Below are positions 9,660-23,338 of a stretch of 64,000 nucleotides of DNA, in pieces. Made by a program: the position numbers and the translations under genes. The stretch is taken from the IMG/VR virus record IMGVR_UViG_3300028840_008160, positions 62,001-126,000 of that record; one strand, written 5' to 3'. Within the stretch, counting starts at the first letter, position 1, and each line of letters starts with the position of its first letter. The notes below the pieces were generated by a model, which was given only the letters and a program-made list of their open reading frames with translations, made no database searches and was not told the origin of the DNA.

Positions 9660-10142
9660 ATGAAACATTTAGCATTAATTCAATCTGAATTTCTGAAATT
9701 AGCTCAAGATGATGATATGAGTGGTACAGTACATGAGGAACGAGAAGCTAGATTAACATTGACTGAATTACCAGAAGAAGTAATGAATAAAAAATCAACG
9801 TTAATCAAACAAGGCGTTTTAAGAGAAGTTCGTGATGATAATGATAAAATGATATCATATGCACGAATTCGAATGAAACAAGAGCCTAATGAAGAACCTA
9901 TATATAGTTTGGGTGTGAAGAATTTTCCATTACATCAGGAAGCAGAAACTGAGATATCAAAAGAAATGTTTGATAGTTTTTTCCCAGATAATTTACTTAA
10001 ACCACAGGTTAAACACAGATATAAGACTGATGATGGTTGGGAAATTGATCAAGTAGATACAGATGGTGGCATTTATGCTGAATATGAACATGATAAAGGT
10101 GACAAAGTGAAAGTTCCGTCACATTGGAAGATCAAACGATGA
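9660..10142 (+). CDS. CYTH-like (triphosphate tunnel metalloenzyme) protein with N-terminal leader
   Basis: ExExR motif (EREAR), YARIR, E.ETEIS.EMF, K.RY....WEID, AEYE. Confidence 0.7.
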   Translation: MKHLALIQSEFLKLAQDDDMSGTVHEEREARLTLTELPEEVMNKKSTLIKQGVLREVRDDNDKMISYARIRMKQEPNEEPIYSLGVKNFPLHQEAETEISKEMFDSFFPDNLLKPQVKHRYKTDDGWEIDQVDTDGGIYAEYEHDKGDKVKVPSHWKIKR

Positions 10143-10564
10143 TACATTTAGCTCAAATACAAGTTGAATTTGCAAAGAAAGCTGATTTGCAAAATGACGT
10201 TAAGAAAGCAGAAAAAGATGTGTCTGTTTTTCTTGGTGGCATGACTGAAGACAATGATTGGCGCAAAACAATTAAGAAAGAATTTAAAGATAAAATTCAA
10301 TTTTTAGACCCATATGATGATGATTGGGAGCCAACTGATAATATTTATGACGAGTGTTCTGCGATGCTGGCTGCTAATTATATCATTTTTTATAGAGGCG
10401 GCAAACTTTCAAAGAATGAACAAAATTTTCTGAAAGGATTAGGACGAAAATTCAAAATATTTGATGATTTATCATCATTAAAACGTTATTTGAAAGTTGT
10501 TGCGCAAATTAGCGATGAATATGATAAATTGGAGCAGTTGAACAAAAAGGAGGAAAAGTTATGA
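10139..10564 (+). CDS. Nucleoside 2-deoxyribosyltransferase-like protein with N-terminal leader (likely start ATG 10139, not 10124)
   Basis: SVFLGG....DWR...FLDP...W...E...M..A..IIFY....S..E pattern; ATGA overlap with the previous stop. Confidence 0.65.
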   Translation: MIHLAQIQVEFAKKADLQNDVKKAEKDVSVFLGGMTEDNDWRKTIKKEFKDKIQFLDPYDDDWEPTDNIYDECSAMLAANYIIFYRGGKLSKNEQNFLKGLGRKFKIFDDLSSLKRYLKVVAQISDEYDKLEQLNKKEEKL

Positions 10565-10992
10565 GAAAGACAGTGATGTTGTTTGGAGTGATTGTTTTGG
10601 CTATGGTTGCTTGTGTATTTGCTGAATCAACAGCAGTTGTTGACACGTTGACGACGACTGTTGATACATTGATTAATAAGACTAGCGATATAGTAGAAGC
10701 AATTGGTGGATTAAAAGCTGGTGATGTAACAATTTGGATTGTTATGGCTGCAGTAATTAAATTATTGATATCTTTGATGAAGTTTAAACCTGTAGCTAAA
10801 CTGCTTGATTCACCGAAGGCTAAAGCAATTAAGCCGTATATTGCATTAGTATTAGGCATAGCCGGAGGATTTATTACTAGTATGACTACAGGACAAAATC
10901 TTGTGACTAGTTTAATTGCCGGTGTTACTGCAGGATTAGGTGCAACTGGCTTACATGAAGTTACAAAGTCAATAAGGAAAAAGAATGGATGA
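10561..10992 (+). CDS. Holin-like membrane protein with signal-peptide-like N-terminus
   Basis: AGGAGG RBS; hydrophobic segments; holin-type C-terminal G..AGL.ATGLHE followed by a basic tail (KSIRKKNG). Confidence 0.6.
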   Translation: MRKTVMLFGVIVLAMVACVFAESTAVVDTLTTTVDTLINKTSDIVEAIGGLKAGDVTIWIVMAAVIKLLISLMKFKPVAKLLDSPKAKAIKPYIALVLGIAGGFITSMTTGQNLVTSLIAGVTAGLGATGLHEVTKSIRKKNG

Positions 10993-11395
10993 TAAGCCGA
11001 AGATTATTGCGGTTGATTTTGACGGCACGATTGTAAAGCCTGAAGATGATCCGCATTTATTAACTGATTTTACTCTTCAGCCATATGCTAAAGAAGTGCT
11101 CGCATGGATATACGAGCACTTCTTTTCTATATTATGGACGTGTCGAGAAGATGACGTATTACAAAATGCGCTTAATTTTCTCGATAGAAATGATATTAAG
11201 TTTCATGCAGTAAATGAGAATGCGCCATTTCTTGATTTTGAAACATCTGATAAAATATATGCTGATTTTTATGTTGATGATAGAGCAGGTATTGGCATTG
11301 ACTGGTTAGCCATTCAAAGTTATTTGAGAAAGAAATTTTTAAAGCCCATTAATTGCGAGAAGATTATTCGGCAAGTAATAATTGAGGTAAAATGA
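10985..11395 (+). CDS. HAD-superfamily phosphatase (capless, phage/BT0820-like)
   Basis: Motif I IAVDFDGTI; motif II ILWTCR; K in SDKIYAD; motif IV YVDDR. Confidence 0.85.
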   Translation: MDDKPKIIAVDFDGTIVKPEDDPHLLTDFTLQPYAKEVLAWIYEHFFSILWTCREDDVLQNALNFLDRNDIKFHAVNENAPFLDFETSDKIYADFYVDDRAGIGIDWLAIQSYLRKKFLKPINCEKIIRQVIIEVK

Positions 11396-14157
11396 TACGC
11401 TTTCAAAGTTATTCACCTGAAAAGAATGCAGTAGGTGTATCAAGAACTTCGCCTATATATTTCGAGATACGTAATGACGGGACAGTAGCTGACAAAACTA
11501 CGCTTAACGTGACGGTTGATGGAAATAATGTTATAGTTAATGGTGTGTTTCAAGCAGGTTATGCTGGAATAATTGACGATCATACTCGAGGATATAATGT
11601 TTACATAACACAAAACTTACCATTTGCACAAGGTTCTGATATTGTAGTTACGATAAATATTAACACTGAGTTTAACGATGTCTATTCGTTTACAATAATC
11701 ACATCTGATGTTACTGCTCCGGTGACAATTGCTAATCCCAGAGGCAGTACATATGCTTCTGCACAGGATGTACAATTATTGACTAATGAACCAGCTACGA
11801 CTTACTATACTATTAATGGATCACTACCTAGTACATCATCACTAGTGTATTCTGCGCCCATACCAATAACAGAAAACACTATATTACGATTTTTTAGTGA
11901 AGATTCTGATTCAAACACTGAATATATTCATACTGAAATGTATGTTATTGATATACAGGCGGTTGATACTAACGCGCCAATTACTACTCCAAATATTGCT
12001 GGTGGAACATATCATGTATTAAGTTCAATAATTTTGACAGCAGATGAACCGTCTACTATCTATTGGACGATAAATGGTCAAACTCCAACTGTTAATTCGT
12101 ATGATGGTAAAGACACATCGCCTGTAACAATTCAATTGCAACAAGGAACAACTGTTTTAAAGTTTTTTGCAGTTGATGATCATGGAAATGAAGAAACTGT
12201 AAAATCTGAAACGTATATAATTGATCCCAGAGAAAACAACATAGTTCCAAAAAATGTGTTTGTGAGCCATCCATATATCAAGAATACGGTTGATATTTGC
12301 TGGGATGACATGACGCCGATTGAATCTGATATTGTAGGGTATAATGTATATCGATCGCAAGTTGATGGTCAACAACTTATGGATTTAGTATCACATGATA
12401 CACTTACTTCTGAAGATGTATACACAAAAGAGCCAGGTACGTTTGTCAAAATTAATAACCAACTCATAACTGTGCCGTTTTATCGTGATCAACAATTAGA
12501 TAGAATCGTAACGCAAGAAGATGTGTCTGAACAATTTAAGTTTAAGACATTGGCTGATGCAGCAACTGATTTTAGTGGTCAAATTGTAAATGCTGACTAT
12601 TGGGAAGCTATTGATCCGGATCGATTGTTTAATCAGTCAGATGGTATTCATTTTACTGATGTTTATGGTGGAAGTAAAGAAGCTTATTTTCAATCAAAAT
12701 TCAGAATGCGTAATGATTTTGAGATTGAAACAGCATATGAACAAATTGTATGGCCGGTGACAGATAATATTCGTCAAGAAGAAATGGCCTTTATTATTGC
12801 TGTAAATCAGTATACGTGCATTGAATTATCACGTATTAGACGCGAAGCCTATGATTATTATGTAAGTAGATTAATAGTGAATTCGCAAGAAATAAGTAAA
12901 GTTGAAACACAGACGATGGATTCAAAAGGACAAATAAAAATTGTTCGTTATGATAGCAATGTTTCAACATATTATTATGATGGGATAAGCTGGGTATTGT
13001 TAGAATCATATTTAAGTTTTTCTCGAGATGATTTGCAAGTAAGATTTTATGCTGTAAGTGCAGATAAACCTATTGATGTATTGTTTTCGTATTTTCACAT
13101 TAATTCAGGTAATGCATATTTGCCGTTATTAAAAAATGTTGATGGTCAGTATTGTATTCAAACACAACATAAACCAATTATAGGAACAGATGATAAAGAA
13201 TATACTGATAGTATTAATGAAGTTGAAGTCATTATTGATGGCCAAGTTGCTTTAATTGATAGAGTTGATGGTTTAAAAGGAACAATCATTCTTAAGACAG
13301 AGCGAGAATTTGATTATGTATTGGACAAATGGATTGAACCTGTTATTCCAACGCCTGAGTCGATTGCGACCGTGACTTATAAGTATAGATTGGCAGAGCT
13401 TAAGTTAAATTTACGAAGATTTCCTCATTATAAAGTTACTGCTGTACTTAGTAATGGTAGCGAAACAAGATTGTCATGGTGTACGTCTGTAACATTACAA
13501 TCTGAGAAATTAGACTATATGTATCGAGAAGCTATTAGAAGAAATGCTTGGTTGTTAGATCAAGCTGGTGAACGTGTCTTGTTGTTTATTAAGAAAACAA
13601 CAGGTGAAAGATGTCAGTGTTATAGATTAAATCAACGAACTCATAAACAACCAAAAGTTGGCAGTTGTTTAGAGTGCTGGGGCACTGGATTTATTGGCGG
13701 TTATGTTGGTCCGTTTGAAATAAAGATTTCACCGTTTCAGGCTGAACAAAAAATTACAATGACAGATCGCGGAATGCATCTTGACAATGTTGAAGATACG
13801 TGGACGACAATAACACCAGTAATAACACAGCGTGATTTTATTGTTCGTAGGAACGGTCAAATATATGCAATAGGTCCTGCTGCTAGACCTGAAGTTAAAG
13901 GTGAACCTACTCAACAACATTTTTCTGTAGAACACGTTGATTCAACAGATATACGATATAAATTTGTACAGTCATTAAATTTGTATGGATATCAGGATAG
14001 AGTTGGATTGAGAAAGGGTACAGATCATTATACTGAAAATCCAATAATTACAGATGGTGAAGTGACTGAACATGACAGACAACGCACTGATAAAGGACCG
14101 ACCGTAACTAATGTTAAAAGAGGTCGAACAATAACATTTGAGAACACGCTTTACTAA
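11392..14157 (+). CDS. Head-closure/neck protein fused to surface-type Ig, chitobiase-C/Fn3-associated and FN3 domains
   Basis: C-terminal GERV...RCQC...CLECWGTGFIGGY zinc motif plus a beta-barrel typical of large myovirus neck proteins. N-terminal SP..NAVGVSR (SbsA-Ig-like), two APVT..P.G.TY...YYTINGS.P units and FN3 (GYNVYRS...YKVTAV). Confidence 0.65.
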   Translation: MIRFQSYSPEKNAVGVSRTSPIYFEIRNDGTVADKTTLNVTVDGNNVIVNGVFQAGYAGIIDDHTRGYNVYITQNLPFAQGSDIVVTININTEFNDVYSFTIITSDVTAPVTIANPRGSTYASAQDVQLLTNEPATTYYTINGSLPSTSSLVYSAPIPITENTILRFFSEDSDSNTEYIHTEMYVIDIQAVDTNAPITTPNIAGGTYHVLSSIILTADEPSTIYWTINGQTPTVNSYDGKDTSPVTIQLQQGTTVLKFFAVDDHGNEETVKSETYIIDPRENNIVPKNVFVSHPYIKNTVDICWDDMTPIESDIVGYNVYRSQVDGQQLMDLVSHDTLTSEDVYTKEPGTFVKINNQLITVPFYRDQQLDRIVTQEDVSEQFKFKTLADAATDFSGQIVNADYWEAIDPDRLFNQSDGIHFTDVYGGSKEAYFQSKFRMRNDFEIETAYEQIVWPVTDNIRQEEMAFIIAVNQYTCIELSRIRREAYDYYVSRLIVNSQEISKVETQTMDSKGQIKIVRYDSNVSTYYYDGISWVLLESYLSFSRDDLQVRFYAVSADKPIDVLFSYFHINSGNAYLPLLKNVDGQYCIQTQHKPIIGTDDKEYTDSINEVEVIIDGQVALIDRVDGLKGTIILKTEREFDYVLDKWIEPVIPTPESIATVTYKYRLAELKLNLRRFPHYKVTAVLSNGSETRLSWCTSVTLQSEKLDYMYREAIRRNAWLLDQAGERVLLFIKKTTGERCQCYRLNQRTHKQPKVGSCLECWGTGFIGGYVGPFEIKISPFQAEQKITMTDRGMHLDNVEDTWTTITPVITQRDFIVRRNGQIYAIGPAARPEVKGEPTQQHFSVEHVDSTDIRYKFVQSLNLYGYQDRVGLRKGTDHYTENPIITDGEVTEHDRQRTDKGPTVTNVKRGRTITFENTLY

Positions 14158-14194
14158 ATGTTGATAAGTTCTGTAATAAAAAAAGGAGAATCCT

Positions 14195-14677
14195 ATGTCT
14201 TATGTTCAAACAGCTGAAGCAAAAATGAGACAGCAAGAACATGATGATAGAGAAAGATTATTTGACGATCATGATGGTTTTATGTATACGGCTGCATCAT
14301 TTATTAGCGGGAATTATACTATAGATCAAGATGATGCACGAGACATAATGAAGTATTTGCATTTGGATTTAGTAAAAGTATTAGATATATTTCCTAAGAA
14401 TAAAATAGATGAAAATGGCGATATAATCAACATTGTAATGAATGTCGGTGACACTATACAAGCACAGGCTGTTCTTCTTTATAGAGATAGTGATCATATA
14501 GATAAGGATGTAACGGGATATGCCGATTGCGAATGGATTACAGATCCATCGCCGACGACGTTTTTGACAGTGTCTCAAGGTTTGATTACTGCCACTTTAA
14601 CAAGTACTGCTGATGTTGAAGTATATGCTAAAATTGGAGATTTTGAATCGCAAAGAATTAGGATAGAGGTGGCATAA
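14195..14677 (+). CDS. Virion protein with C-terminal Ig-like (Big_2-type) domain
   Basis: AAAGGAG RBS; VGDTIQ.QA...DVT...W.......TVSQGLITA pattern. Confidence 0.55.
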   Translation: MSYVQTAEAKMRQQEHDDRERLFDDHDGFMYTAASFISGNYTIDQDDARDIMKYLHLDLVKVLDIFPKNKIDENGDIINIVMNVGDTIQAQAVLLYRDSDHIDKDVTGYADCEWITDPSPTTFLTVSQGLITATLTSTADVEVYAKIGDFESQRIRIEVA

Positions 14678-15096
14678 TGTATGATAATGGCGTATCAATT
14701 GCTCCAACTAGACGTTTAGGTCAACCGAGAACAAGCATAAATGATCAAGGTCATTTACCATTAGGATCAAAGATTGCAAATGTCAGTCAGAAGTTTAATG
14801 ATGATACAGAAATAACTACAACTAGAACAGTGCATGTTCAAGATCCAGTAGCAAGAAACGAAAACTATATTGATGATCAGCGATTGACACCTGAGTCTAG
14901 AGATTTAGTTGGTAAAAAAGCACCGAATATGCCGACAACTGAATTTGATCAGTCAATTATGAATACTTTTAATGCTAAAACAAATGAAAATATGACATTA
15001 AATGAAGTTAAAGAACGTAAATTATCGTGTTATAATTTGGTTTCATTTCCGTTTACACAAGCAAAACCATTTGAATTGCCATCATGCCAAAGCTAA
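14677..15096 (+). CDS. Hypothetical protein
   Basis: GAGGTGG RBS and TAATG coupling; 139 aa. Confidence 0.55.
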   Translation: MYDNGVSIAPTRRLGQPRTSINDQGHLPLGSKIANVSQKFNDDTEITTTRTVHVQDPVARNENYIDDQRLTPESRDLVGKKAPNMPTTEFDQSIMNTFNAKTNENMTLNEVKERKLSCYNLVSFPFTQAKPFELPSCQS

Positions 15097-15347
15097 GTGT
15101 TAGACGGTTACCATTACGATTTGAGATTGAACAGTCACATAAAGTGAAAATTCATGAAATGCGACGAAAAGCAAAATATGATGTTGCGTTAACATTAGGA
15201 TTACCAATAGAACATAGATTAGTTAATCTAGTTTATGACGCATCGCAAAAACGCGTAAAGATTCTATTAACTAATGATGATGAACTTTTGAAATATAGAC
15301 AAATGCTTAACAACAAATTTCATATAGAGGTTCGTGAATGCAATTAA
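15084..15347 (+). CDS. Hypothetical basic protein
   Basis: 87-aa ORF overlapping both neighbours slightly. Confidence 0.5.
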   Translation: MPKLSVRRLPLRFEIEQSHKVKIHEMRRKAKYDVALTLGLPIEHRLVNLVYDASQKRVKILLTNDDELLKYRQMLNNKFHIEVRECN

Positions 15348-15790
15348 AAATGCGATATCTACATTTCAACTCGTCTGCATTACGAGAAGCTAGAGGTCGC
15401 ATTATTGATGAAACTGCACGTAAAGGTGTTCAAATTTTTAGACAAGAAATAAGAAGAAGAAGGCTTATTAATACAGGTCATATGTTAGATAGTGTTGGTG
15501 CAACAATTAAACGAAATAGTGTAACATTTGACATAAATGCTGATTATGCTGGTATAATAAACGATGGTGTTCGTCGACATAAAATGAGATATTTAGTTGA
15601 TGCAGGACCAATTCCATTAGTTACTAGACGTGGTCGTAAGATTTTTAGAGTTGCAACGCCTTCAAATATAAGAGAACGAGATCGATGGTTACATCCGGGA
15701 TTCAAACGTGGCAAGGGATTCTTTGATAAAAGTGCAGATAAAATTGAAGCTGTTGCAAAAGAGCTTATAATAGATGAAGGTATAATATGA
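15338..15790 (+). CDS. HK97 gp10-like / virion morphogenesis (tail completion) protein
   Basis: Basic protein with NTGHMLDSV (TGxLxxS), YAGIINDG and HPG...FF motifs; neck-region position. Confidence 0.65.
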   Translation: MQLKMRYLHFNSSALREARGRIIDETARKGVQIFRQEIRRRRLINTGHMLDSVGATIKRNSVTFDINADYAGIINDGVRRHKMRYLVDAGPIPLVTRRGRKIFRVATPSNIRERDRWLHPGFKRGKGFFDKSADKIEAVAKELIIDEGII

Positions 15791-15805
15791 ACAATTTAAC
15801 GATTA

Positions 15806-16525
15806 ATGAAGGTATATATGAATGTGCAACTTAATAATGGTCAACTTGGTGATAGAATATGGCATCAGCATACTAGGGCTTTAATGCCAGAGTATGTACG
15901 AGTTATTGGTCGTGTTATCGGCAAAGTTTTTATTCGTGATATCGCTAAAGAAGTTAGATACAATCAAGTTGTTGATATTTTGATAACTGATGCTAAACGA
16001 TCTGATGACTTGGTTAGAGCAATTTCTCAAAAATGGGTTGACATAGTTTACGGAAAAGAATTTTTAGACAAAAAGAAATATTCATCAGAGATTCTACGTC
16101 AACCGTCACAGACGCAATTTGTAACCAATAACGCTAGACAGACTGTTGATTTAAGTGAAGTTAAAGTTTTAGCATCTCAAATTGCACAAGATGCTGCAAA
16201 TAGATCAGTAATGTCAATTAGAGAGTCATTGGATGAATTACAAGAATCAATTAAGAATTCAAAAAGTTCATCAATTGATGTTGACCAAGTTATAAAAGAG
16301 TTGACGACTAAATTGCCACAACAAGCACAAGTCAATGAAAAATCTAAATTTGATGATGAAATTGCTAATAACGTATTTATTAATCTTGACGAACAGAAAG
16401 AGCTAAAAACAAATATACAACAAGACGGTTTGGGGACTGTTACGAAGCGCAAAGGTAAGAAAGCCAAGATGACAATTAAACGATTAAAACATATTAACAA
16501 AGGAGATGGTAATGGAAATGTCTAG
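15806..16525 (+). CDS. Coiled-coil protein, candidate partner of the downstream actin
   Basis: Small N-terminal alpha/beta domain, central coiled coil, basic C-terminal helix; overlaps the start of the actin gene. Confidence 0.6.
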   Translation: MKVYMNVQLNNGQLGDRIWHQHTRALMPEYVRVIGRVIGKVFIRDIAKEVRYNQVVDILITDAKRSDDLVRAISQKWVDIVYGKEFLDKKKYSSEILRQPSQTQFVTNNARQTVDLSEVKVLASQIAQDAANRSVMSIRESLDELQESIKNSKSSSIDVDQVIKELTTKLPQQAQVNEKSKFDDEIANNVFINLDEQKELKTNIQQDGLGTVTKRKGKKAKMTIKRLKHINKGDGNGNV

Positions 16526-17660
16526 CCCTAAGAAAATTCGACGGCATCGATCACGTGAGGAGAAGCGTCAACTTCGTGAAGATACTAATGAAGAGACCCA
16601 AGATACTCAAAAAGTTCAGACACAAGAGGAAGAAAAAGTAGTGAAGGCAAAAGTTAAACGTAGATTTGGTGTAGGTTTAGATATAGGAACATCATTTATT
16701 AATAGAGCGACTATTGATGATGATGACGATATTGATATCAGAACGCAACGAGATGCATTTTTTGATATCGAAAATGATAAATTTGCAAGGAATATGTTGA
16801 CGACAAATAATGCAAATTATATCGTATCTGACGATTCAAAATTATTATATGTAATTGGTCAGGAAGCAATCAATTTCGCTAATGTATTCAAGCGTGAAGT
16901 TCGTAGGCCTCTGCATAAAGGTGTGATTAGTACAAGGGAACCCGAAGCATTATTGATGATTAAGACAATCATTACTAATATATTAGGTAAACCTGTAACA
17001 GAAAATGAAGTTTGTCAATTTTCAGTGCCGGCTGAGCCTATTGATGCAGATTACAATATCATATATCATAGAAACATTTTACAATCGTTTGTCGAATCTG
17101 CTGGATATAAAGCAGTACCGATCAATGAGGCTAGAGCTGTTTGTTATTCAGAATTAGATGACGACGGATTTACTGGTCTTGCTATTAGTTTTGGTGCTGG
17201 TATGGTGAATGTGTCATTAACATATATGGGTGCAGGATCAATTGAGTTTAGTTTGTCAAGAGCAGGTGATTGGATTGATGAGAATGCAGCAAAAGCTATT
17301 GGTGAGAGAGCAACAAAAATGGTTGCTGTAAAAGAAGCTGGTCTTGATTTATTGAAACCAAAAGATAGATATGAAGAGTCAATCAGCATCTTTTATCGTA
17401 ATTTTATAGCATATGTCGTAAAAAAGTTTGAACAGAAATTGTCGCAAACTGAAGATATTCCAGAATTTCCTGAACCTATTACTATTATTTTGGCAGGTGG
17501 AACGTCACTTGTGAAATCATTTGATGTTGTGTTTAAGCAAGAAATTGATAAGATTAAGTTACCGTTTAGAATCAAAGAAATCAAACTAGCTGAAGATCAA
17601 TTATTTGCTGTTGCAAAAGGTTGTCTATATTCTGCATTGTCTGAATACGAAGATGAATAA
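16512..17660 (+). CDS. Actin-fold ATPase, volactin-like family (start 16506/16512/16518 uncertain)
   Basis: Phosphate-1 GLDIGTS, connect-1 PINEARAV, phosphate-2 ISFGAGMVNV, AGDWID, adenosine ILAGGTS, connect-2 AVAKGC. AGGAG at 16501-16505 favours ATG 16512. Confidence 0.88.
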   Translation: MEMSSPKKIRRHRSREEKRQLREDTNEETQDTQKVQTQEEEKVVKAKVKRRFGVGLDIGTSFINRATIDDDDDIDIRTQRDAFFDIENDKFARNMLTTNNANYIVSDDSKLLYVIGQEAINFANVFKREVRRPLHKGVISTREPEALLMIKTIITNILGKPVTENEVCQFSVPAEPIDADYNIIYHRNILQSFVESAGYKAVPINEARAVCYSELDDDGFTGLAISFGAGMVNVSLTYMGAGSIEFSLSRAGDWIDENAAKAIGERATKMVAVKEAGLDLLKPKDRYEESISIFYRNFIAYVVKKFEQKLSQTEDIPEFPEPITIILAGGTSLVKSFDVVFKQEIDKIKLPFRIKEIKLAEDQLFAVAKGCLYSALSEYEDE

Positions 17661-17671
17661 AGGAGGAAACT

Positions 17672-17950
17672 ATGTCGAATTCAGAGAACAAGATTGTTAG
17701 TAAAATTGTAAAAGAAGCTAACATTGGAATAAAGAAACAAGCGAAATTGTTTAATCGCGATGATATCGTGACACTTGTCGACCAAGTACAAGGATTAAAT
17801 AAAGGAACGAATTACAAAGTTATTGATAATTCAAATCCTGGGTATATTACGATTGCTACATTTGATCCGTCTGATAGTGATGATACTATTGGGGAAAGAA
17901 TTGGTGAATTTAGAACTGATAGATTCGTCCATGTCAACGATGTGTACTAA
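17672..17950 (+). CDS. Small hypothetical protein (SH3-like beta pattern after a helical leader)
   Basis: AAGGAGG RBS; 92 aa. Confidence 0.6.
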   Translation: MSNSENKIVSKIVKEANIGIKKQAKLFNRDDIVTLVDQVQGLNKGTNYKVIDNSNPGYITIATFDPSDSDDTIGERIGEFRTDRFVHVNDVY

Positions 17951-17958
17951 GGTTAATA

Positions 17959-19164
17959 ATGTTTTACAGAATAACAAATGTTGTTAAAAAAATTATCATT
18001 CAAGAGTTACAAGAGCTCTTTAAGGATCATCCTGTTTTTAGTGATGAATTAGTTATCACTAATAAGTATTCATTTGAAGAACGTCCAAAATATGCTATAA
18101 TTGTTAAAACAGCATCTGCTAAATCACAAAAACTGTCATTAGATAATTATAAGGGAATTGTTCAATCATATGTTACTTTAGCTAATTTAAAGAACACTCC
18201 TGGTCGCATGATAGAATGGGTTAGAGAAGATGTAGCAAACATAAGTAATGTAGTTAAGCCCGGATTTTATGTTGTTGAAATGGTAGAAGATGATCAATTT
18301 ACAGTGTCTGCTTATCTTACTGTTGCTGATGAAGTGTTAACGATTGAGACGAATGGTTTTGAACATGCTTTTTTACAACATCAAAACATTAATCCTAACA
18401 GTGAATTAGTTTTGACAGAAACTGGTCGAAGATTACAACCTAACGAGCATTATACGATTGATAATAGCACGGGTGAAATTACTTTTTTGCAACCAACAGA
18501 AGATTATGAAACTATTTCTGTTGATTATCAATACATTGGTAATGTTACTGGACCGTTTACTGTTCAACCAGAAACAGTTGATCAATTGGCAATACCAGGT
18601 GTTGTTTTAGCATTTGGTAATTTTTTAAAGAAGGGTGGTTTACAAGTAGTAGTTGTGTATCCTGACAGACAAGAAGTAGCAAAATCATATTTAGGCAAAT
18701 GGAATATGACATTAAGTTTGGGTGCGGTTGCTCAAGACACTGATACACAAGAACAATTGATAGATTTAGCATCTATGTATATATGGTCTGTATTACAAGA
18801 AAAATTAGTTAATGATGGTATATATGTGTCAGAATTTAATATTGGTGGTGAATCTGAAGATGATGAAGTGAAGAGTGCTAATGAATTATCGTATATGGGT
18901 GATTTATCGTTTAATGTTGATGTTGAATGGGAAGCTTTTCAACCAATTCTCGGTGTAATTAAGAACGTGTTTCTTAATCGTGTCGAAGATTTTGGACAAT
19001 ATGATGATGCAGAACATGAAATTAGAAGTAAACGACCGTTTAATATATCGCAAAGAGGAGTTGACTACATGACAGGTTTACAACCTGTTGAAAATTTAGA
19101 TCCTTTCCTGATAAGACCTCTTCCAAAATATACTCTGGTGCAATCAAGCACGCACGTTGGGTAG
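17959..19164 (+). CDS. Putative tail terminator/completion protein with inserted beta domain
   Basis: Alpha/beta pattern (IIQELQELF...ERP.YAIIVK...W.MTLSL.AVAQD...EQLID); last neck-type gene before the fibre and sheath. Confidence 0.55.
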   Translation: MFYRITNVVKKIIIQELQELFKDHPVFSDELVITNKYSFEERPKYAIIVKTASAKSQKLSLDNYKGIVQSYVTLANLKNTPGRMIEWVREDVANISNVVKPGFYVVEMVEDDQFTVSAYLTVADEVLTIETNGFEHAFLQHQNINPNSELVLTETGRRLQPNEHYTIDNSTGEITFLQPTEDYETISVDYQYIGNVTGPFTVQPETVDQLAIPGVVLAFGNFLKKGGLQVVVVYPDRQEVAKSYLGKWNMTLSLGAVAQDTDTQEQLIDLASMYIWSVLQEKLVNDGIYVSEFNIGGESEDDEVKSANELSYMGDLSFNVDVEWEAFQPILGVIKNVFLNRVEDFGQYDDAEHEIRSKRPFNISQRGVDYMTGLQPVENLDPFLIRPLPKYTLVQSSTHVG

Positions 19165-19171
19165 AAAAATT

Positions 19172-19348
19172 ATGAATGATGAACAAATCATTCATGACAT
19201 AGTTCACGAATTGTCAAGTGAAAAGAAAAAACCCACAGGTCATCCGGCAAGTAGGCGTTTGCCCAAAAGAGTATATATGGATGTCGCTATACCGGCAGTT
19301 GGTGACTGGCCAAAATATAGCGATCCCATCAAAAGTCGCGAACAATAA
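19172..19348 (+). CDS. Small hypothetical protein (58 aa from ATG 19172)
   Basis: Track ORF 19157..19348; first ATG at 19172, just after the upstream stop. Confidence 0.45.
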   Translation: MNDEQIIHDIVHELSSEKKKPTGHPASRRLPKRVYMDVAIPAVGDWPKYSDPIKSREQ

Positions 19349-19361
19349 TCATTTCTTTATT

Positions 19362-19381
19362 TTTATACTATTTTTGATAAT
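19362..19381 (+). promoter_or_regulatory. Candidate late promoter motif TTTATACTATTTTTGATAAT
   Basis: In one of the few intergenic gaps; 15/20 identical to the motif at 23653-23672. Confidence 0.35.
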
Positions 19382-19435
19382 TGTATCATCTAGTTTTAAG
19401 GTGAAAAGTCTTTTCATTATTGGGAGTCAGATTAT

Positions 19436-22400
19436 ATGAGTCAACCCTATGTCGGCAATTATTCATACAGCATTAACGATTTAGAGACTAGTTCTAAAAA
19501 GCGTTATTTGATGGCGGGTCAAAAAGGAAAACCCGTTTTAGATGAAGAACTTTCTGAAGTTAATTTCAGAAATTTTGATCTTAAAAGACGCATTTGGGAG
19601 CGTAATGCTGGTGATGCTGCATTGGGTCGTGATTCATTTGAAATTGTCCAAAGTTCAACAACGACTGTTAGTAACTTCACGATAAAAGGTGGGACAGCTG
19701 AAGATCCAGCTGTGCTATTTATACAAGGCTATCCGCTATTACTCTTTGGCGACATCGAATATAATCAACAAAACAATACTGGCGCGTTAACTGATGATGA
19801 CTATACAGAGACATTAATTCCTGGAATAAGTACGCCTACGTCTGATCGCACAGATACAGTTTATGTTGATTGCTATTTAGCCGAAGTTAGTTCTGAAACT
19901 GGCAGTGAATATCAAGATCCAGCGATTAAAGATGCTGTCTTGGGATTACAGACTGCTAATAGGTTTAGAATTGTTCAAGATATACGAGTTGAAGAAGGAT
20001 CAACGACGATACCTATTGACGGTGTTGATGGCAATGGTATATATCATAGATATTATAAGTTAGCAGAACTTGATAGGCATAATGGTGTGCCTGATATTTA
20101 TACAGCTGATATTACTGACATGCGAACAGTTACGACGTCGCTTAAGGAAATATCAAATGGATATGGTGATATTCATGTAAGAAATGCTATTGTCGATAAT
20201 GATCTTGATGTTCATGGCACACTTACAATCATTAATACATCTGAAACTAATCAAGAAAAATTAGTTATCACTTGCAATGACCCTGGCGTTGTTGCAATGG
20301 TAGTTAACAAGTCAGAAAATGGTGATGCAGTTCAAATCAATAAGACATCAGGCACCGGCTATGCATTGATTGTTAACAGCGGTTATGTCGGCATTAATAC
20401 AAGTGCACCATCTGAGGCACTTTTCATTCATCAACAACGTTTGGGCATATTGGGTTCAAATGGCGCACAAATACGTTTGTCTGGAAATGATCATACTGCT
20501 GGCGCTTTATATACAACAAATAACTATCCATTGTATTTAGGTGTAAATAATATAGCTGAAAGAATTGTAATAGCGGCAACAACTGGTTATGTTGGTATTC
20601 ATACTACAAACCCAAGTAACGAATTAGATGTTAATGGTACAATTAGAATTAGAGGTGGATTGCCAGCTGCTGGCAATTTATTACAGTCAGATGCAACAGG
20701 TGTTGGCACATGGGTTAGTCAGTCATCTATTGATGATAATGACTGGGTAGAAAGTGGAAATGATGTTTACTTTAATAAATCAGGCAATGTTGGAATTAAT
20801 ACATCTTCTCCGTCAAACGCTAAACTTGACGTTAATGGTCAAATAAGAATGCGTACAGATGCCGCATCTGGAAAGATTATAATTTCAGATGCAAATGGTG
20901 TAATGAGTTGGGTTAGTCAAACAGCGATTAGTGACGGTGACTGGGTTGTTAGTGGAAGTAATGTTTATAACAACACTGGCAATATTGGCATAGGCACTAG
21001 CAACCCAACAAAGAAATTTGCTGTTCAAGCAGCTGCATCTGATGGTATGTATTTATGGAATAGTTCGTCTGCAGAACGAGGAAAATTAGCATTTGATGCA
21101 TCATCAAATGCAGTATTAGAATTAAGGAATGCAGCTGGTAATCCGCAAGTTCTTTTAGATTCTAGCACTGGTGCTAATTATATATTTGCCGGAGATACAG
21201 GTATTGGTACTGCTACTCCTGGTGCAAAACTTGATGTTGAAGGCAATTTTAGAGTACTGAACGGTACAACTATTAATGAGTTTTCAACTGATGGAACATT
21301 AGCAGGTGACTCTGATGACGCTGTACCGACTGAGAAAGCTGTCAAAACATATATTGATCAATATAGTCATTGGATTAAAACGTCGACAACAGTGCATTTA
21401 CAAACAGGATCTAATAATGTTGGTATAGGTACTGCATCATCGACATATAAATTAAGAGTAGAAGGCACATCATATTTGAATGGTTCAACTGATATTAAAG
21501 GTGATTTGACAATTACTGATCAGGATTCTACTGATGTTATTGTTAAAATGTATGATAGTGGTGATGATGGTGTTATTGATGTTTATCAAAATAATGCTGT
21601 TACAACTAAAATTCATGGTAATGGAACAAGCTATTTTAAAGGTGGTAGCGTTGGAATAGGAACAGAAACGCCTGCTACAACACTTGATGTTGAAGGTACA
21701 CTTAGAGTATTGAATGGCACGTCAATTAATGAATTTTCAACAGATGGTACAATGGCTGGTGATTCAGACGACGCTGTGCCAACAGAAAAAGCTGTCAGAA
21801 CTTATGTTACTAGTAATGCTGGTCAGTGGAATAGAATATCATCGGTGTTGTCGCCGAAGACAATAACAGATGGTGTTAGTGTCGGTCAAACTGCCGGAGT
21901 CGCAAATACACTTTCAGTTAATGGTAGAGTATCTGTTACTGGTACTAGCACTACACAATCAGCAATTTATAGTATTGCAGGCGGACCTGGTGCAGCTGTG
22001 CAGGCTGTTCAGGATAATGCAAATGGTTATGCTATTGAATCTAATGCTTCTGATACTACAGGATATATTTTGATTGGTAAAAGTGGTGCAAGTACAAGAT
22101 TTACAATGAGGGGTAGTGGTAATACTCGTTGGGCAGCTGGTGGAATAGCTATAAATGAAGCTGAAGTTTCAACTACTGGTTATTTACAAGCTACTGGTCG
22201 TATAGTATGTACTGGTACTAGTACTACACTAGCAGCAATTCAGGGTATTGGAAGCGGTGGTCCTGGTGTATATGCTATACAAGATACTGCAAGTCGTTAT
22301 GCTATTGAATCTGTTGTTTCTGATGATACAGCATATAATTTATTTTGCAAAAGTGGTGCAAGTACAAGATTTACAATGAGGGGTAGTGGTGATACTCGTT

Positions 22401-23338
22401 GGGCAGCTGGTGGAATAGCTATAAATGAAGCTGAAGTTTCAACTACTGGTTATTTACAAGCTACTGGTCGTATAGTATGTACTGGTACTAGTACTACACA
22501 ATCAGCAATTTATAGTATTGCAGGCGGACCTGGTGCAGCTGTGCAGGCTGTTCAGGATAATGCAAATGGTTATGCTATTGAATCTAATGCTTCTGATACT
22601 ACAGGATATAATTTATATTGCAAAAGTGGTGCTTCACTAAAGCATTATTTAAAAGGTAATGGTGAAGCTTATTTTGATTTTTCAGTTGGTGTCGGAACAA
22701 CACCGCCTGGTTATGGTGGCGCATTTATAGCTGGAACAAGTACAACGAACCCAGCAATGTTTATTTATGGTGTTGGCGGTGGACTGCGTGTTATAGCAAC
22801 TACTGGCGCAGGATTTACTTATGAAGGATGGGACTCAACATTGGGTCGTACATTTACTGTTAGTAATGCAGGTCAAATTAAATCAGATTATGGTGCTGCT
22901 GTATATTCACCCGCTGACTTTGCTGAATGGACTAAGGTTGAAGGAGAATTAAAAAATTATGATTTGGGAACAATAGTTTCACAATCAGATATAGATTTAA
23001 CAGTTAAAGTTGCTGATGATGTTGAAAGTGTTTATGGTATTGTAACAGATAGAGCAACATTTCTAGGCGGTTTGACAGGAGTTGTGAAAAAAGAATATGA
23101 TATTTTAGAAGATCATCAGATTGAACGAAAATTTAATGCCAAAAAAATTGCTATGACTGGTCATGTAGTTGTAAAAGTTATTGGCAATATTAAAGTTGGA
23201 CAAAGGTTGACGTTGTCAAGTATACATGGTGTAGCAAAAGCAGCTAAAACAACTGAAGAAAAAATGTTCGCGTTTGCATTTGCTAGACAAAATTATAATG
23301 CAGATGAAATTGGATTAATTGAAGTACGATTGCTTTAA
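19436..23338 (+). CDS. Fibre/appendage protein with C-terminal intramolecular chaperone (peptidase G2-like autocleavage domain)
   Basis: N-terminal QKGKPVLDEELSE attachment domain; repeated GNVGIGT.SP..KLDV.G fibre units; two INEFSTDGT.AGDSDDAVPTEKAV units; C-terminal ADFAEW...GIVT...GG...IAMTGHV.VKV.G.IKVG..L. Confidence 0.8.
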   Translation: MSQPYVGNYSYSINDLETSSKKRYLMAGQKGKPVLDEELSEVNFRNFDLKRRIWERNAGDAALGRDSFEIVQSSTTTVSNFTIKGGTAEDPAVLFIQGYPLLLFGDIEYNQQNNTGALTDDDYTETLIPGISTPTSDRTDTVYVDCYLAEVSSETGSEYQDPAIKDAVLGLQTANRFRIVQDIRVEEGSTTIPIDGVDGNGIYHRYYKLAELDRHNGVPDIYTADITDMRTVTTSLKEISNGYGDIHVRNAIVDNDLDVHGTLTIINTSETNQEKLVITCNDPGVVAMVVNKSENGDAVQINKTSGTGYALIVNSGYVGINTSAPSEALFIHQQRLGILGSNGAQIRLSGNDHTAGALYTTNNYPLYLGVNNIAERIVIAATTGYVGIHTTNPSNELDVNGTIRIRGGLPAAGNLLQSDATGVGTWVSQSSIDDNDWVESGNDVYFNKSGNVGINTSSPSNAKLDVNGQIRMRTDAASGKIIISDANGVMSWVSQTAISDGDWVVSGSNVYNNTGNIGIGTSNPTKKFAVQAAASDGMYLWNSSSAERGKLAFDASSNAVLELRNAAGNPQVLLDSSTGANYIFAGDTGIGTATPGAKLDVEGNFRVLNGTTINEFSTDGTLAGDSDDAVPTEKAVKTYIDQYSHWIKTSTTVHLQTGSNNVGIGTASSTYKLRVEGTSYLNGSTDIKGDLTITDQDSTDVIVKMYDSGDDGVIDVYQNNAVTTKIHGNGTSYFKGGSVGIGTETPATTLDVEGTLRVLNGTSINEFSTDGTMAGDSDDAVPTEKAVRTYVTSNAGQWNRISSVLSPKTITDGVSVGQTAGVANTLSVNGRVSVTGTSTTQSAIYSIAGGPGAAVQAVQDNANGYAIESNASDTTGYILIGKSGASTRFTMRGSGNTRWAAGGIAINEAEVSTTGYLQATGRIVCTGTSTTLAAIQGIGSGGPGVYAIQDTASRYAIESVVSDDTAYNLFCKSGASTRFTMRGSGDTRWAAGGIAINEAEVSTTGYLQATGRIVCTGTSTTQSAIYSIAGGPGAAVQAVQDNANGYAIESNASDTTGYNLYCKSGASLKHYLKGNGEAYFDFSVGVGTTPPGYGGAFIAGTSTTNPAMFIYGVGGGLRVIATTGAGFTYEGWDSTLGRTFTVSNAGQIKSDYGAAVYSPADFAEWTKVEGELKNYDLGTIVSQSDIDLTVKVADDVESVYGIVTDRATFLGGLTGVVKKEYDILEDHQIERKFNAKKIAMTGHVVVKVIGNIKVGQRLTLSSIHGVAKAAKTTEEKMFAFAFARQNYNADEIGLIEVRLL
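21937..22610 (+). repeat. Near-identical interleaved coding duplications (A-B-A'-B-A) in the distal part of the fibre
   Basis: 21937-22067 vs 22480-22610 (131 nt, 1 mismatch); 22079-22229 vs 22349-22499 (151 nt, 1 mismatch). Confidence 0.92.

What the first reader, a model, noticed from the sequence alone, without database searches (positions are those of the whole stretch)
15806..16525. Coiled-coil gene overlapping the actin: candidate adaptor or nucleator
Seen: a small N-terminal domain, a coiled coil, and a C-terminal basic amphipathic helix (KAKMTIKRLKHINKG); its end overlaps the actin start. Established: ParM/AlfA-type actins work with an adjacent adaptor, and ParR binds ParM through a C-terminal helix. 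Inference: it links the filament to cargo (capsid, tail or DNA).
Basis: inference. Interest (0 to 1): 0.6.

Follow-up and report, generated by a model that had tools for sequence, protein, structure and literature searches.

The report
Phage adaptor that docks onto actin
A 235-residue protein of a huge phage, encoded just before the phage's actin-like gene, ends in a short motif that is predicted to dock onto that actin; the same motif ends the gene in front of related actins in many bacteria, which suggests a general, so far undescribed way of hooking cargo to this actin family.

Summary
The ORF is real: 15806-16525, more likely starting at 15818 (235 aa). It ends 14 nt inside the next gene, a full-length Volactin-family actin. 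It has no Pfam or PHROG match.

- **Architecture:** a confidently folded small beta-rich N-domain, a variable helical middle, and a conserved C-terminal module. A coiled coil is not demonstrated.
- **Linkage:** in 13 of 13 related phage loci a homologue lies upstream of the actin. Both search directions agree (actin to partner 8/8, partner to actin 4/4).
- **Shared motif:** in bacterial genomes (Planctomycetota and gas-vesicle gene clusters of several phyla) the otherwise unrelated gene upstream of the actin ends in the same motif, LESN[IML]..V.VK...L.KLK.LKGG. It occurs in 54 of 80 loci against 5 of 8060 other ORFs.
- **Predicted complex:** the C-terminal 66 residues against the actin core score 0.78, best control 0.03. 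The contacts fall on the three conserved motif elements.

Best reading: a modular adaptor with a conserved actin-docking tail and a phage-specific cargo head. The cargo is unknown. The gene lies between neck and tail-terminator genes, so I infer a virion part; this was not tested. Nothing here is experimental. I rate it a new variant of the ParM/ParR, AlpC/AlpA and MamK kind.

The parts
15818..16525 (+). Adaptor gene, 235 aa (a longer 239-aa reading starts at 15806); member of an unnamed family of about 180-240-aa phage proteins
   Evidence: ORF list and sequence; gene call P0001 of 235 aa; 92 cluster representatives at E<=1e-3 in the profile search, nearly all full length; no Pfam or PHROG family
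15884..16057 (+). N-terminal small beta-rich domain (residues 23-80; four strands, two short helices, a fifth strand), preceded by helix 9-21. Specific to the phage members; proposed cargo-binding head
   Evidence: AF2 pLDDT about 90; conserved core IGRV.G.V.I.D....V.Y......S.DL..AI...W; no known fold, best Z 4.5; look-alikes are only small viral hypothetical proteins and DUF7444
16058..16372 (+). Variable Q-rich linker and helical middle (helices 112-147 and 155-164); spacer, possibly an oligomerisation helix
   Evidence: Poorly conserved and variable in length in alignments A2 and A3; low-confidence helix; heptad test not significant
16373..16504 (+). C-terminal volactin-docking module (residues 186-229: VFINLDEQKELKTNIQQDGLGTVTKRKGKKAKMTIKRLKHINKG); predicted interface is residues 194-227
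   Evidence: Conserved in all family members; shared with the upstream genes of bacterial volactins; predicted complex score 0.78 against best control 0.03
16499..16505 (+). Shine-Dalgarno-like AAAGGAG for the actin gene, inside the last codons of the adaptor gene (translational coupling is plausible)
   Evidence: Sequence; actin gene call of 382 aa starts at 16512
16512..17660 (+). Volactin-family actin homologue, 382 aa, with a charged N-terminal extension of about 50 aa
   Evidence: PF25216, E 3.5e-80, full length; closest solved relative MamK 5jyg, E 6e-11, then MreB
15338..15790 (+). HK97 gp10-like tail-completion / Neck1 protein; conserved upstream neighbour
   Evidence: PF04883, E 7e-5; phrog_5, E 4.8e-8; synteny
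17672..17950 (+). Small conserved gene after the actin in the closest relatives (92-136 aa); function unknown
   Evidence: Homologues in L002-L005; not universal in more distant loci
17959..19164 (+). 401-aa protein, probably the tail terminator; conserved downstream neighbour
   Evidence: Atlas feature match 0.91 (173 shared features) to clusters carrying PF23932 SP10_terminator, a lead only; synteny in L002-L009 and L097

Best explanation
The gene encodes a modular adaptor for the phage's volactin-type actin.

Its last 40 or so residues form a docking module. Two short strands (LKTNI, LGTVT) are predicted to add onto the edge strands of actin subdomains IA and IB. The basic helix (KKAKMTIKRLKHI) is predicted to lie against the IA helices and part of IIA.

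This docking module is ancient and shared. The gene in front of volactin genes in Planctomycetota chromosomes and in gas-vesicle gene clusters ends in the same motif, while its N-terminal part is entirely different.

The phage version carries a small beta-rich N-domain found only in phages, joined by a flexible, partly helical linker. I infer that this head binds a phage cargo. The pair sits between the neck (gp10-like) and tail-terminator genes in a tightly packed same-strand run of structural genes, so the cargo is most likely a virion part or assembly intermediate. The actin filament would then position or move that cargo late in infection.

Shown in silico: linkage, motif conservation and the predicted interface. 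Inferred: that binding occurs in the cell, that the N-domain binds cargo, and what the cargo is.
For: 1. Linkage, tested in both directions.
- Starting from the actin, 8 of 8 related viral loci (L002-L006, L008, L009, L097) carry a homologue upstream on the same strand.
- Starting from very distant family members (E 1e-4 to 1e-10), 4 of 4 loci carry a Volactin gene downstream: L011, L012 and L015 directly, L013 after 3.9 kb of inserted genes.

2. Motif shared across contexts.
- An HMM built from the phage family alone hits the C-terminal end of the ORF just upstream of the actin in bacterial loci (best E 2.4e-9).
- A motif pattern is found in 54 of 80 loci at that position, against 5 of 8060 other ORFs. 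Those 5 also lie near an actin.
- A reciprocal HMM from 49 Planctomycetota tails finds only family members in the viral loci (L006 5e-5, L009 3e-4).

3. Predicted complex of the actin core with residues 170-235: score 0.78 (runs 0.81, 0.77, 0.78), best of 3 controls 0.03. The mark was reached by 58 of 80 solved complexes and 2 of 110 mismatched pairs. At least 69% of contacts are shared between runs and partner pLDDT is at least 60. The contacts (194-200, 202-224, 226-227) coincide with the three conserved motif elements.

4. N-termini are swapped between contexts. The phage form has the beta domain. The gas-vesicle form has a wHTH-like domain (sub-threshold). The Planctomycetota form has another small domain plus a long coiled coil.

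5. Gene packing: the genes overlap or abut, and a Shine-Dalgarno-like site for the actin lies inside the adaptor gene.
Against: - There are no experimental data of any kind. No RNA run holds the sequence.
- All phage loci share one conserved structural block, so phage synteny alone could be inheritance rather than function.
- The reciprocal Planctomycetota HMM does not detect the window's own protein or its closest relatives. The link to the bacterial motif is therefore transitive, through L006, L008 and L009.
- The motif pattern was written after seeing the data.
- Predicted interface residues on the actin are more variable than the rest of the core (entropy 1.76 against 1.33 bits). This is uninformative, because surface positions are more variable than buried ones.
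- The complex used my own alignments, so the tool's calibration holds only roughly.
- The N-domain has no known fold or function, so 'cargo binding' is pure inference.
- One distant phage actin (L098, 31% identity) has no detectable partner within 9 kb.
Confidence: 0.6

Rival explanations
1. It regulates the filament rather than carrying cargo. It could act as a nucleator, an end-capper or a monomer-sequestering factor, with a C-terminal module that occupies a surface needed for polymerisation. The N-domain would only oligomerise or regulate.
For: The predicted interface touches the IA helices, the C-terminal helix and IIA residues (144-159, 362-381, 212-220, 239-240). From general knowledge of ParM and actin, that region takes part in longitudinal contacts and is where end-binding factors dock. 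AlpA changes AlpC polymerisation dynamics (PMC5539076 abstract).
Against: N-terminal domains differ entirely between contexts. That is what one expects of cargo-specific heads, not of a common regulator. Filament geometry could not be checked with these tools.
Confidence: 0.2
2. It is a ParR- or AlpA-like DNA-binding adaptor that ties phage DNA (a centromere-like site) to the filament, for genome positioning or for plasmid-prophage segregation.
For: Known actin adaptors of plasmids and of prophage CGP3 bind DNA (abstracts of PMC4446434 and PMC5539076). The record is labelled a provirus. Partners in the gas-vesicle clade look wHTH-like.
Against: The phage N-domain is a beta-rich mini-domain with no RHH or HTH and no Pfam DNA-binding hit. 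There are no tandem or iterated repeats within or beside the cassette. The cassette lies in the neck-tail structural block, not a replication or partition block.
Confidence: 0.1
3. It is a membrane tether. The basic C-terminal helix would be a membrane-targeting sequence (MinD or FtsA type) and another part would bind the actin.
For: The helix carries a net charge of mostly +4 to +8 with a hydrophobic stripe A216-I220-L223-I226.
Against: The hydrophobic moment is not above shuffles. The helix is confidently placed on the actin in the predicted complex. There is no hydrophobic segment elsewhere.
Confidence: 0.05
4. It is an ordinary virion or morphogenetic protein (neck fibre, scaffold or chaperone), and its adjacency to the actin is only inherited gene order.
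For: It always lies between gp10-like and terminator-like genes. It has an N-domain, helix and C-terminal-peptide layout like scaffolds. There are weak fold echoes of YqbF and of the gpFI C-domain (Z 3.9 and 3.2).
Against: The C-terminal motif recurs with volactins outside any phage context. The related jumbo phage Tunturi_5 (sheath 32.5% identical) gave no actin hit at E<=1e-5; I did not check whether it has the adaptor gene. The predicted complex passes.
Confidence: 0.05

Closest known systems
ParM/ParR/parC plasmid segregation (R1 type II partition)
   Same: An actin-like filament has a small adaptor encoded next to it, and the adaptor's C-terminal peptide docks on the actin (established knowledge). 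Here the docking is predicted.
   Different: ParR has an RHH DNA-binding domain, binds adjacent parC repeats, and is encoded after parM. Here the head is a beta-rich domain of unknown fold, there are no repeats, the gene lies before the actin, and the docking element includes two strands as well as a helix. The actin is of the volactin/MamK lineage, not ParM.
AlpC/AlpA/alpS of Corynebacterium prophage CGP3
   Same: A phage-encoded actin-like protein has a dedicated adaptor that influences its polymerisation (PMC4446434 and PMC5539076).
   Different: AlpA binds DNA sites and the system serves viral DNA transport and replication. Here the pair sits in the virion neck-tail block of a huge phage with no DNA-binding signature. 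No sequence relation was tested.
MamK with MamJ and McaA/McaB (magnetosome positioning)
   Same: MamK is the closest solved relative of this actin (5jyg, E 6e-11), and it positions an organelle through adaptor proteins. The gas-vesicle-cluster volactin pairs found here suggest the same logic.
   Different: The adaptor families are unrelated, and no MamJ-like protein is present. The volactin family carries S-x-G-x-G where MamK has D-x-G-x-G.
PhuZ tubulin spindle of nucleus-forming jumbo phages
   Same: A cytoskeletal polymer encoded by a very large phage organises late steps of infection (reviews PMC7950403 and PMC8314001, listed; capsid trafficking is from my own knowledge).
   Different: PhuZ is a tubulin, not an actin, and no dedicated adaptor gene is known beside phuZ. 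This phage is of another lineage, with a sheath related to phage G, Tunturi_5 and LR745208.
Volactin (VolA, HVO_2015) of Haloferax volcanii; BeeR of Verrucomicrobiota
   Same: The phage actin is a full-length member of the volactin Pfam family. Like BeeR it has a charged N-terminal extension of 30-50 aa (PMC11929497).
   Different: In the passages of the volactin paper that I searched for gene-neighbourhood terms no partner is described. The likely BeeR entry 8r2n (my assignment) matches the volactin profile only at E 0.035, so BeeR is a different family.

Membership tests
Volactin (PF25216), for the neighbouring actin | Full-length match above Pfam's gathering score | tested here: met
   270.3 bits against a cut-off of 35, E 3.5e-80, profile positions 3-321 of 321; the same result in the genome search
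ParR-type centromere-binding adaptor | N-terminal ribbon-helix-helix DNA-binding domain | tested here: not met
   The AF2 model has a helix, four strands, two short helices and a strand. No RHH or HTH Pfam hit. Fold searches give best Z 4.5 with no DNA-binding fold.
ParR-type centromere-binding adaptor | Adjacent centromere of iterated repeats (parC) | tested here: not met
   No tandem repeat at 10000-21936 and only chance-level short repeats at 14000-19500. The gaps between the genes of the cassette are 8-27 nt.
ParR-type centromere-binding adaptor | C-terminal peptide that docks on the cognate actin-like ATPase | tested here: met
   In silico only: score 0.78, best of 3 controls 0.03; mark reached by 58 of 80 solved complexes and 2 of 110 mismatched pairs; at least 69% contact agreement; partner pLDDT at least 60
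Volactin-partner family (defined here; unnamed in Pfam and PHROGs) | Encoded upstream of a volactin gene on the same strand | tested here: met
   Window plus 12 further phage loci; 54 of 80 bacterial loci by motif
Volactin-partner family (defined here; unnamed in Pfam and PHROGs) | C-terminal motif: strand (L-E/K-S/T-N-I), strand (G/V-x-V), then basic helix (L-x-K-L/M-K-x-L/F) | tested here: met
   Alignments A2 and A3; phage-family HMM against bacterial ORFs. The reciprocal HMM reaches L006, L008, L009, L011 and L015 but not the window's own clade, so membership of the wider group is by transitive homology.
Membrane-targeting amphipathic helix (MinD/FtsA type) | Terminal helix with a significant hydrophobic moment that is free to bind lipid | tested here: inconclusive
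   Hydrophobic moment 0.31-0.49, with 7-28% of shuffles reaching it. The helix is placed on the actin in the predicted complex.
Coiled-coil protein | Heptad a/d hydrophobic periodicity over several heptads | tested here: inconclusive
   a/d excess reaches about the 5% level in only 2 of 17 members (the window's own at 0.052). The helix has pLDDT 50-57. The Planctomycetota partners do carry long coiled coils.
AlpA (CGP3 adaptor) | Sequence or fold relation to AlpA and binding to alpS DNA | not tested

The most novel reading that the evidence does not exclude
Volactin-type actins have a universal cargo-coupling handle: a tail of about 40 residues on the protein encoded just upstream. Evolution would have re-used it with different heads to position different cargoes: gas vesicles in several phyla, an unknown structure in Planctomycetota, and virion parts in a lineage of huge phages. 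In the phage, the actin and this adaptor would form a late-expressed transport or positioning system for heads, tails or their junction, an actin counterpart of PhuZ-based capsid trafficking.
Probability: 0.3. Interest if true: 0.85.

Novelty: new variant of a known kind. Interest (0 to 1): 0.7.

Why it matters
Actin-like filaments of prokaryotes work through adaptors (ParR, AlpA, MamJ, RodZ). In the passages I read of the paper that named volactin no partner is described, and BeeR's function is stated to be unknown (PMC11929497).

This locus offers three things:
- a candidate partner family for the volactin family;
- a defined docking motif of 35-40 residues with a residue-level predicted interface, which can be tested by simple pull-downs and point mutants;
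- three natural contexts with different heads (huge-phage virion module, gas-vesicle clusters, Planctomycetota chromosomes).

For phage biology it points to an actin-based system in the virion-assembly programme of a widespread lineage of huge phages. My literature searches found no description of this.

Tried and rejected
- **Pfam and PHROG scans of the protein:** nothing above noise.
- **tblastn against isolated phages:** no match.
- **Single-sequence pattern scan of IMG/VR:** no relative. The word-based protein search found only 14. The profile search then found 92 representatives; that costly search was used because the scans left the protein open.
- **Fold searches:** the whole model and the N-domain were searched against PDB, BFVD and the Atlas. 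No convincing fold: best Z 4.7 and 4.5, Foldseek E 0.16 or worse in PDB.
- **Top BFVD hit, phage G gp158:** rejected. It lies in a non-syntenic, non-structural region.
- **Archaeal host:** one 75%-identical actin is filed under a Nitrosarchaeum MAG. I do not adopt this. The sheath relates to bacterial jumbo phages (Tunturi_5, phage G, LR745208) and the binning is probably driven by low GC.
- **Recent capture of the actin from Planctomycetota:** not supported. The quick tree separates a 68-row Planctomycetota clade (99*) from the viral rows plus the mixed-phylum clade. The careful search was unfinished and several viral branches are long.
- **Extra copies of the motif or the actin** in the 329.8-kb record: none.
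- **Conservation of predicted interface residues on the actin:** no support; the test is confounded by surface exposure.
- **Promoter and terminator scan:** chance level.
- **Coiled-coil and amphipathicity tests:** not significant.
- **Expression:** no RNA run holds the stretch.

Full report
**What is at the coordinates**

The window is bases 62001-126000 of a 329.8-kb IMG/VR virus record. It is labelled a provirus and CheckV estimates 67% completeness. GC is 35%, and every long ORF in the window lies on the + strand.

The ORF 15806-16525 exists. The collection's own gene call and all homologues begin at the second ATG, 15818, giving 235 aa starting MNV.... All residue numbers below refer to this 235-aa form.

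The gene ends at TAG 16523-16525. The next gene is called from ATG 16512 (382 aa), 6 nt after an AAAGGAG at 16499-16505. The two genes therefore overlap by 14 nt.

That next gene is a full-length member of the Volactin family (PF25216, E 3.5e-80, 270 bits against a cut-off of 35). Its closest solved relative is MamK (5jyg, E 6e-11), followed by MreB.

**The surrounding genes**
- Upstream lies an HK97 gp10-like tail-completion / Neck1 gene.
- Downstream lie a 92-aa gene and a 401-aa gene that resembles tail terminators. This rests on an Atlas feature match of 0.91 to SP10_terminator clusters and is a lead only.
- Further downstream are a 1300-aa repeat protein and the tail sheath (phrog_2839, E 1.5e-29).
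- The sheath is related to those of Tunturiibacter phage Tunturi_5 (32.5% identity over 91% of its length), Bacillus phage G and the 485-kb uncultured phage LR745208.

This is a huge tailed phage. The actin pair sits between its neck and tail genes.

**Anatomy of the protein**

The protein has no Pfam or PHROG family. Alignments of 18 and 17 homologues show three parts:
- a conserved N-terminal region, residues 1-85;
- a middle that varies in length and is Q-rich and helical;
- a conserved C-terminal block, V186-F-I-N-L-D-x-x-K-E-L-K-T-N-I ... L-G-x-V-T ... K-K-A-K-x-I-x-K-L-K-x-I.

AlphaFold2 folds residues 23-80 with pLDDT about 90. The fold is four strands, two short helices and a fifth strand, preceded by helix 9-21.

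The middle is predicted as helices 112-147 and 155-164, but only at pLDDT 50-57. A heptad test is not better than shuffles in most members.

The C-terminal helix (214-228) is strongly basic, with a net charge across the family of mostly +4 to +8. Its hydrophobic moment is not significantly above shuffles.

The N-domain matches no solved fold convincingly. The best Z is 4.5, with weak echoes of small beta barrels, YqbF and the gpFI C-domain. Its look-alikes are small viral hypothetical proteins and DUF7444.

**Linkage in phages**

I tested linkage from both sides.

*From the actin.* Four IMG/VR contigs with 70-77% identical actins keep the order gp10-like, homologue, actin, small gene, 401-aa gene. 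In L004 a 380-aa gene that looks like a homing endonuclease (not scanned) sits between the two.
- Contigs with 46-52% identical actins (L006, L008, L009) also carry a homologue upstream, with 0-2 small genes between.
- The high-GC huge phage LR745208 (37% identical actin) also carries one.
- One very distant phage actin (LR756511, 31%) has no detectable partner within 9 kb.

*From the protein.* A profile search of 1.84 billion representatives found 92 clusters at E<=1e-3, nearly all 180-240 aa and matched end to end. I looked up four of the most distant ones.
- Three are followed directly by a Volactin gene: L011, L012 and L015.
- The fourth (L013) has the actin 3.9 kb downstream. A poly(A)-polymerase-like gene, two small genes and a Vsr-like endonuclease lie between.

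In total, 13 of 13 related phage loci have the pair on the same strand with the adaptor first. Only one copy of each gene exists in the 329.8-kb record.

**The same tail in bacteria**

This is the result that lifts the argument above inherited gene order.

A scan of species-representative genomes with the actin alignment found at least 564 relatives. The best 80 are mostly from Planctomycetota, on contigs of up to 8 Mb.

- An HMM built from the phage family alone hits the ORF immediately upstream of the actin in those loci. It aligns the ORF's very end to the HMM's C-terminal half (best E 2.4e-9, 3.9e-8 and 3.4e-7 in a set of about 8000 ORFs).
- Those ORFs end in ...LF...(L/V)ESN(I/M/L)..(V/I).VK....G(I/V)...L.KLK.LKGG.
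- A pattern for this motif, written after seeing the data, is present in an ORF ending within 400 nt upstream of the actin in 54 of 80 loci. It is present in only 5 of 8060 other ORFs, and those 5 are also next to an actin.
- A reciprocal HMM built from 49 Planctomycetota tails picks only family members in the viral loci: L006 5e-5, L009 3e-4, L008 0.013, L011 0.018, L015 0.034. It does not detect the window's own clade. The window's protein therefore joins the bacterial motif transitively, through clear full-length homology to L006, L008 and L009 (E 1e-49 to 1e-61).

Outside the tail the upstream proteins are unrelated to the phage protein.
- Planctomycetota versions have another small N-domain and a long coiled coil, with lengths of 130-630 aa.
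- A second group has a wHTH-like N-domain (HTH_IclR E 0.003 and AbiEi_4 E 0.0022, both below threshold).

That second group belongs to a mixed-phylum actin clade (Omnitrophota, Elusimicrobiota, Bacteroidota, Saganbacteria, Parcubacteria and others). In 7 of 7 loci examined, its pair lies inside a gas-vesicle gene cluster with GvpL/GvpF, GvpK, GvpA-like and CDC48-type AAA genes.

**Predicted docking**

My single complex job paired the actin core (residues 48-382, with a 41-row alignment) with residues 170-235 of the adaptor (17-row alignment).
- The score was 0.78 (runs 0.81, 0.77 and 0.78), against a best of 3 controls of 0.03.
- The mark was reached by 58 of 80 solved complexes and 2 of 110 mismatched pairs.
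- The runs agree in at least 69% of their contacts, and the partner's pLDDT is at least 60.
- Because my own alignments were used, those counts hold only roughly.

The model supports binding but does not show it.

The confident contacts on the adaptor are residues 194-200, 202-224 and 226-227. By the smallest-error pairs:
- K197/T198/N199/I200 pair with actin N102-V105, a strand of the subdomain IB hairpin;
- T207/V208/T209/K210/R211 pair with actin I74-Q79, the edge strand of subdomain IA;
- the helix (T219, I220) touches actin F365, Y373 and L376.

Further contacts fall at actin 144-159, 212-220 and 239-240. The subdomain names are my assignment from the sequence motifs and the MamK alignment. 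I had no coordinates to inspect.

The three contact elements are exactly the three conserved elements of the motif shared with bacteria. The two lines of evidence are separate in kind, although the alignment that shows the motif was also the input to the fold.

**Mechanism**

The best-supported reading is a modular adaptor: a conserved actin-docking tail, a spacer, and a context-specific head. That the tail binds the actin is supported in silico; I put it at about 0.8.

That the head binds cargo is inferred from the swapping of heads between contexts.

The cargo in the phage is unknown.
- I favour a virion part or assembly intermediate. The pair is fixed between the neck and tail-terminator genes and is packed into the structural gene run: gaps of 8-27 nt, and no excess of promoter-like or terminator-like sites.
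- DNA is less likely. There is no DNA-binding fold and there are no iterons nearby.

I cannot exclude that the protein mainly regulates polymerisation, as a nucleator or an end-binder. Part of the predicted interface lies where end-binding factors dock on other actins; this point rests on general knowledge and was not tested here.

**Comparison with known systems**

The system works like ParM/ParR and the prophage AlpC/AlpA system (PMC4446434 and PMC5539076). The gas-vesicle context suggests it also works like MamK with its adaptors. It is not a member of the ParR family: the RHH domain, the adjacent centromere and the gene order all fail.

BeeR is a MamK-like actin of Verrucomicrobiota of unknown function with a similar disordered N-extension (PMC11929497). 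It is a different family. An entry I take to be BeeR's (8r2n, 386 aa, 12 chains) matches the volactin profile only at E 0.035.

'Saltatorellin' of Saltatorellota is described as MamK-like and filament-forming (bioRxiv 10.1101/817700). It may or may not belong to this family; I could not test it.

My literature searches found no description of:
- a volactin partner;
- a volactin in phages;
- an actin in gas-vesicle clusters.

The library is incomplete, so this does not prove novelty.

**Limits**
- Everything here is computational.
- The DNA is held by sediment and seawater metagenome runs, and by no RNA run.
- The actin tree is the quick version and has long viral branches.
- Table 11 reads all genes, so no other genetic code was needed.

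Noticed in passing
L073:3538-9880, L046:3327-8072; also L068, L058, L037, L047, L075: In a mixed-phylum clade of volactins (Omnitrophota, Elusimicrobiota, Bacteroidota, Saganbacteria, Parcubacteria and others) the actin and its motif-bearing partner lie inside gas-vesicle gene clusters. These carry several GvpL/GvpF genes, GvpK, a GvpA-like gene and a CDC48-type AAA ATPase. This held in 7 of 7 loci examined. It suggests an actin that positions gas vesicles. No paper was found.
   Followed up: partly
L016-L095 (for example L095:4310-5950, L021:4911-5900): Volactin-family actins are very common in Planctomycetota genomes: at least 564 relatives in the species set, and most of the best 80. They are preceded by a protein with a conserved small N-domain, a long coiled coil and the same C-terminal motif.
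   Followed up: partly
window 17187-17210 (actin residues 226-233, SFGAGMVN): The family has an invariant S-x-G-x-G where MamK (by alignment) has D-x-G-x-G, the phosphate-2 motif of actin-like ATPases (naming and MreB from my own knowledge). S226 is invariant in 41 sequences. Whether ATP hydrolysis is affected is unknown.
   Followed up: no
window 16512-16670 (actin residues 1-53): The phage actin has a highly charged N-terminal extension of about 50 aa, rich in K, R and E. It is variable in relatives. It recalls the disordered N-extension described for BeeR filaments (PMC11929497).
   Followed up: no
L004:4851-5993; L013:5647-9537: Selfish or accessory genes are inserted between the adaptor and the actin in some phages. 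L004 has a 380-aa gene that looks like a homing endonuclease (not scanned). L013 has a 637-aa poly(A)-polymerase-like gene, two small genes and a Vsr-like endonuclease.
   Followed up: partly
L072:2604-5469: Two volactin paralogues lie in tandem in one Planctomycetota MAG. The motif-bearing partner lies upstream of the first.
   Followed up: no
L035:1483-2160, L036:7364-7741, L063:7993-8589, L071:5947-6564: In a few loci the motif-bearing gene lies downstream of the actin instead of upstream, on the same strand.
   Followed up: no
window 21937-22632: There are 2.6 tandem copies of a 270-nt unit (84% matches) inside the 1300-aa gene 19436-23338, which looks like a repeat-built fibre. It matches phrog_9563, a family of unknown function.
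   Followed up: no
window 17672-17950: The 92-aa gene after the actin is conserved in the closest relatives (motif ...LVDQVQGLNKG..YKV...). It is replaced or absent in distant ones. It could be a second accessory factor of the actin.
   Followed up: no
window 11392-14157 and L006, L008, L011: A conserved protein of about 900-920 aa with two chitobiase/hexosaminidase C-terminal (CHB_HEX_C_1 / Fn3_assoc) domains lies upstream in the same block across distant relatives.
   Followed up: no
P0018 (58.7-kb contig): A 75%-identical actin is filed in NCBI under a Nitrosarchaeum MAG. Given the phage synteny of this clade and its low GC, this is probably a phage contig binned with a low-GC archaeon.
   Followed up: no
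window 10561-11395: A holin-like gene (phrog_1299, E 2.9e-8) and a phosphoheptose-isomerase-like gene (phrog_1238, E 1.7e-27) sit just upstream of the structural block.
   Followed up: no
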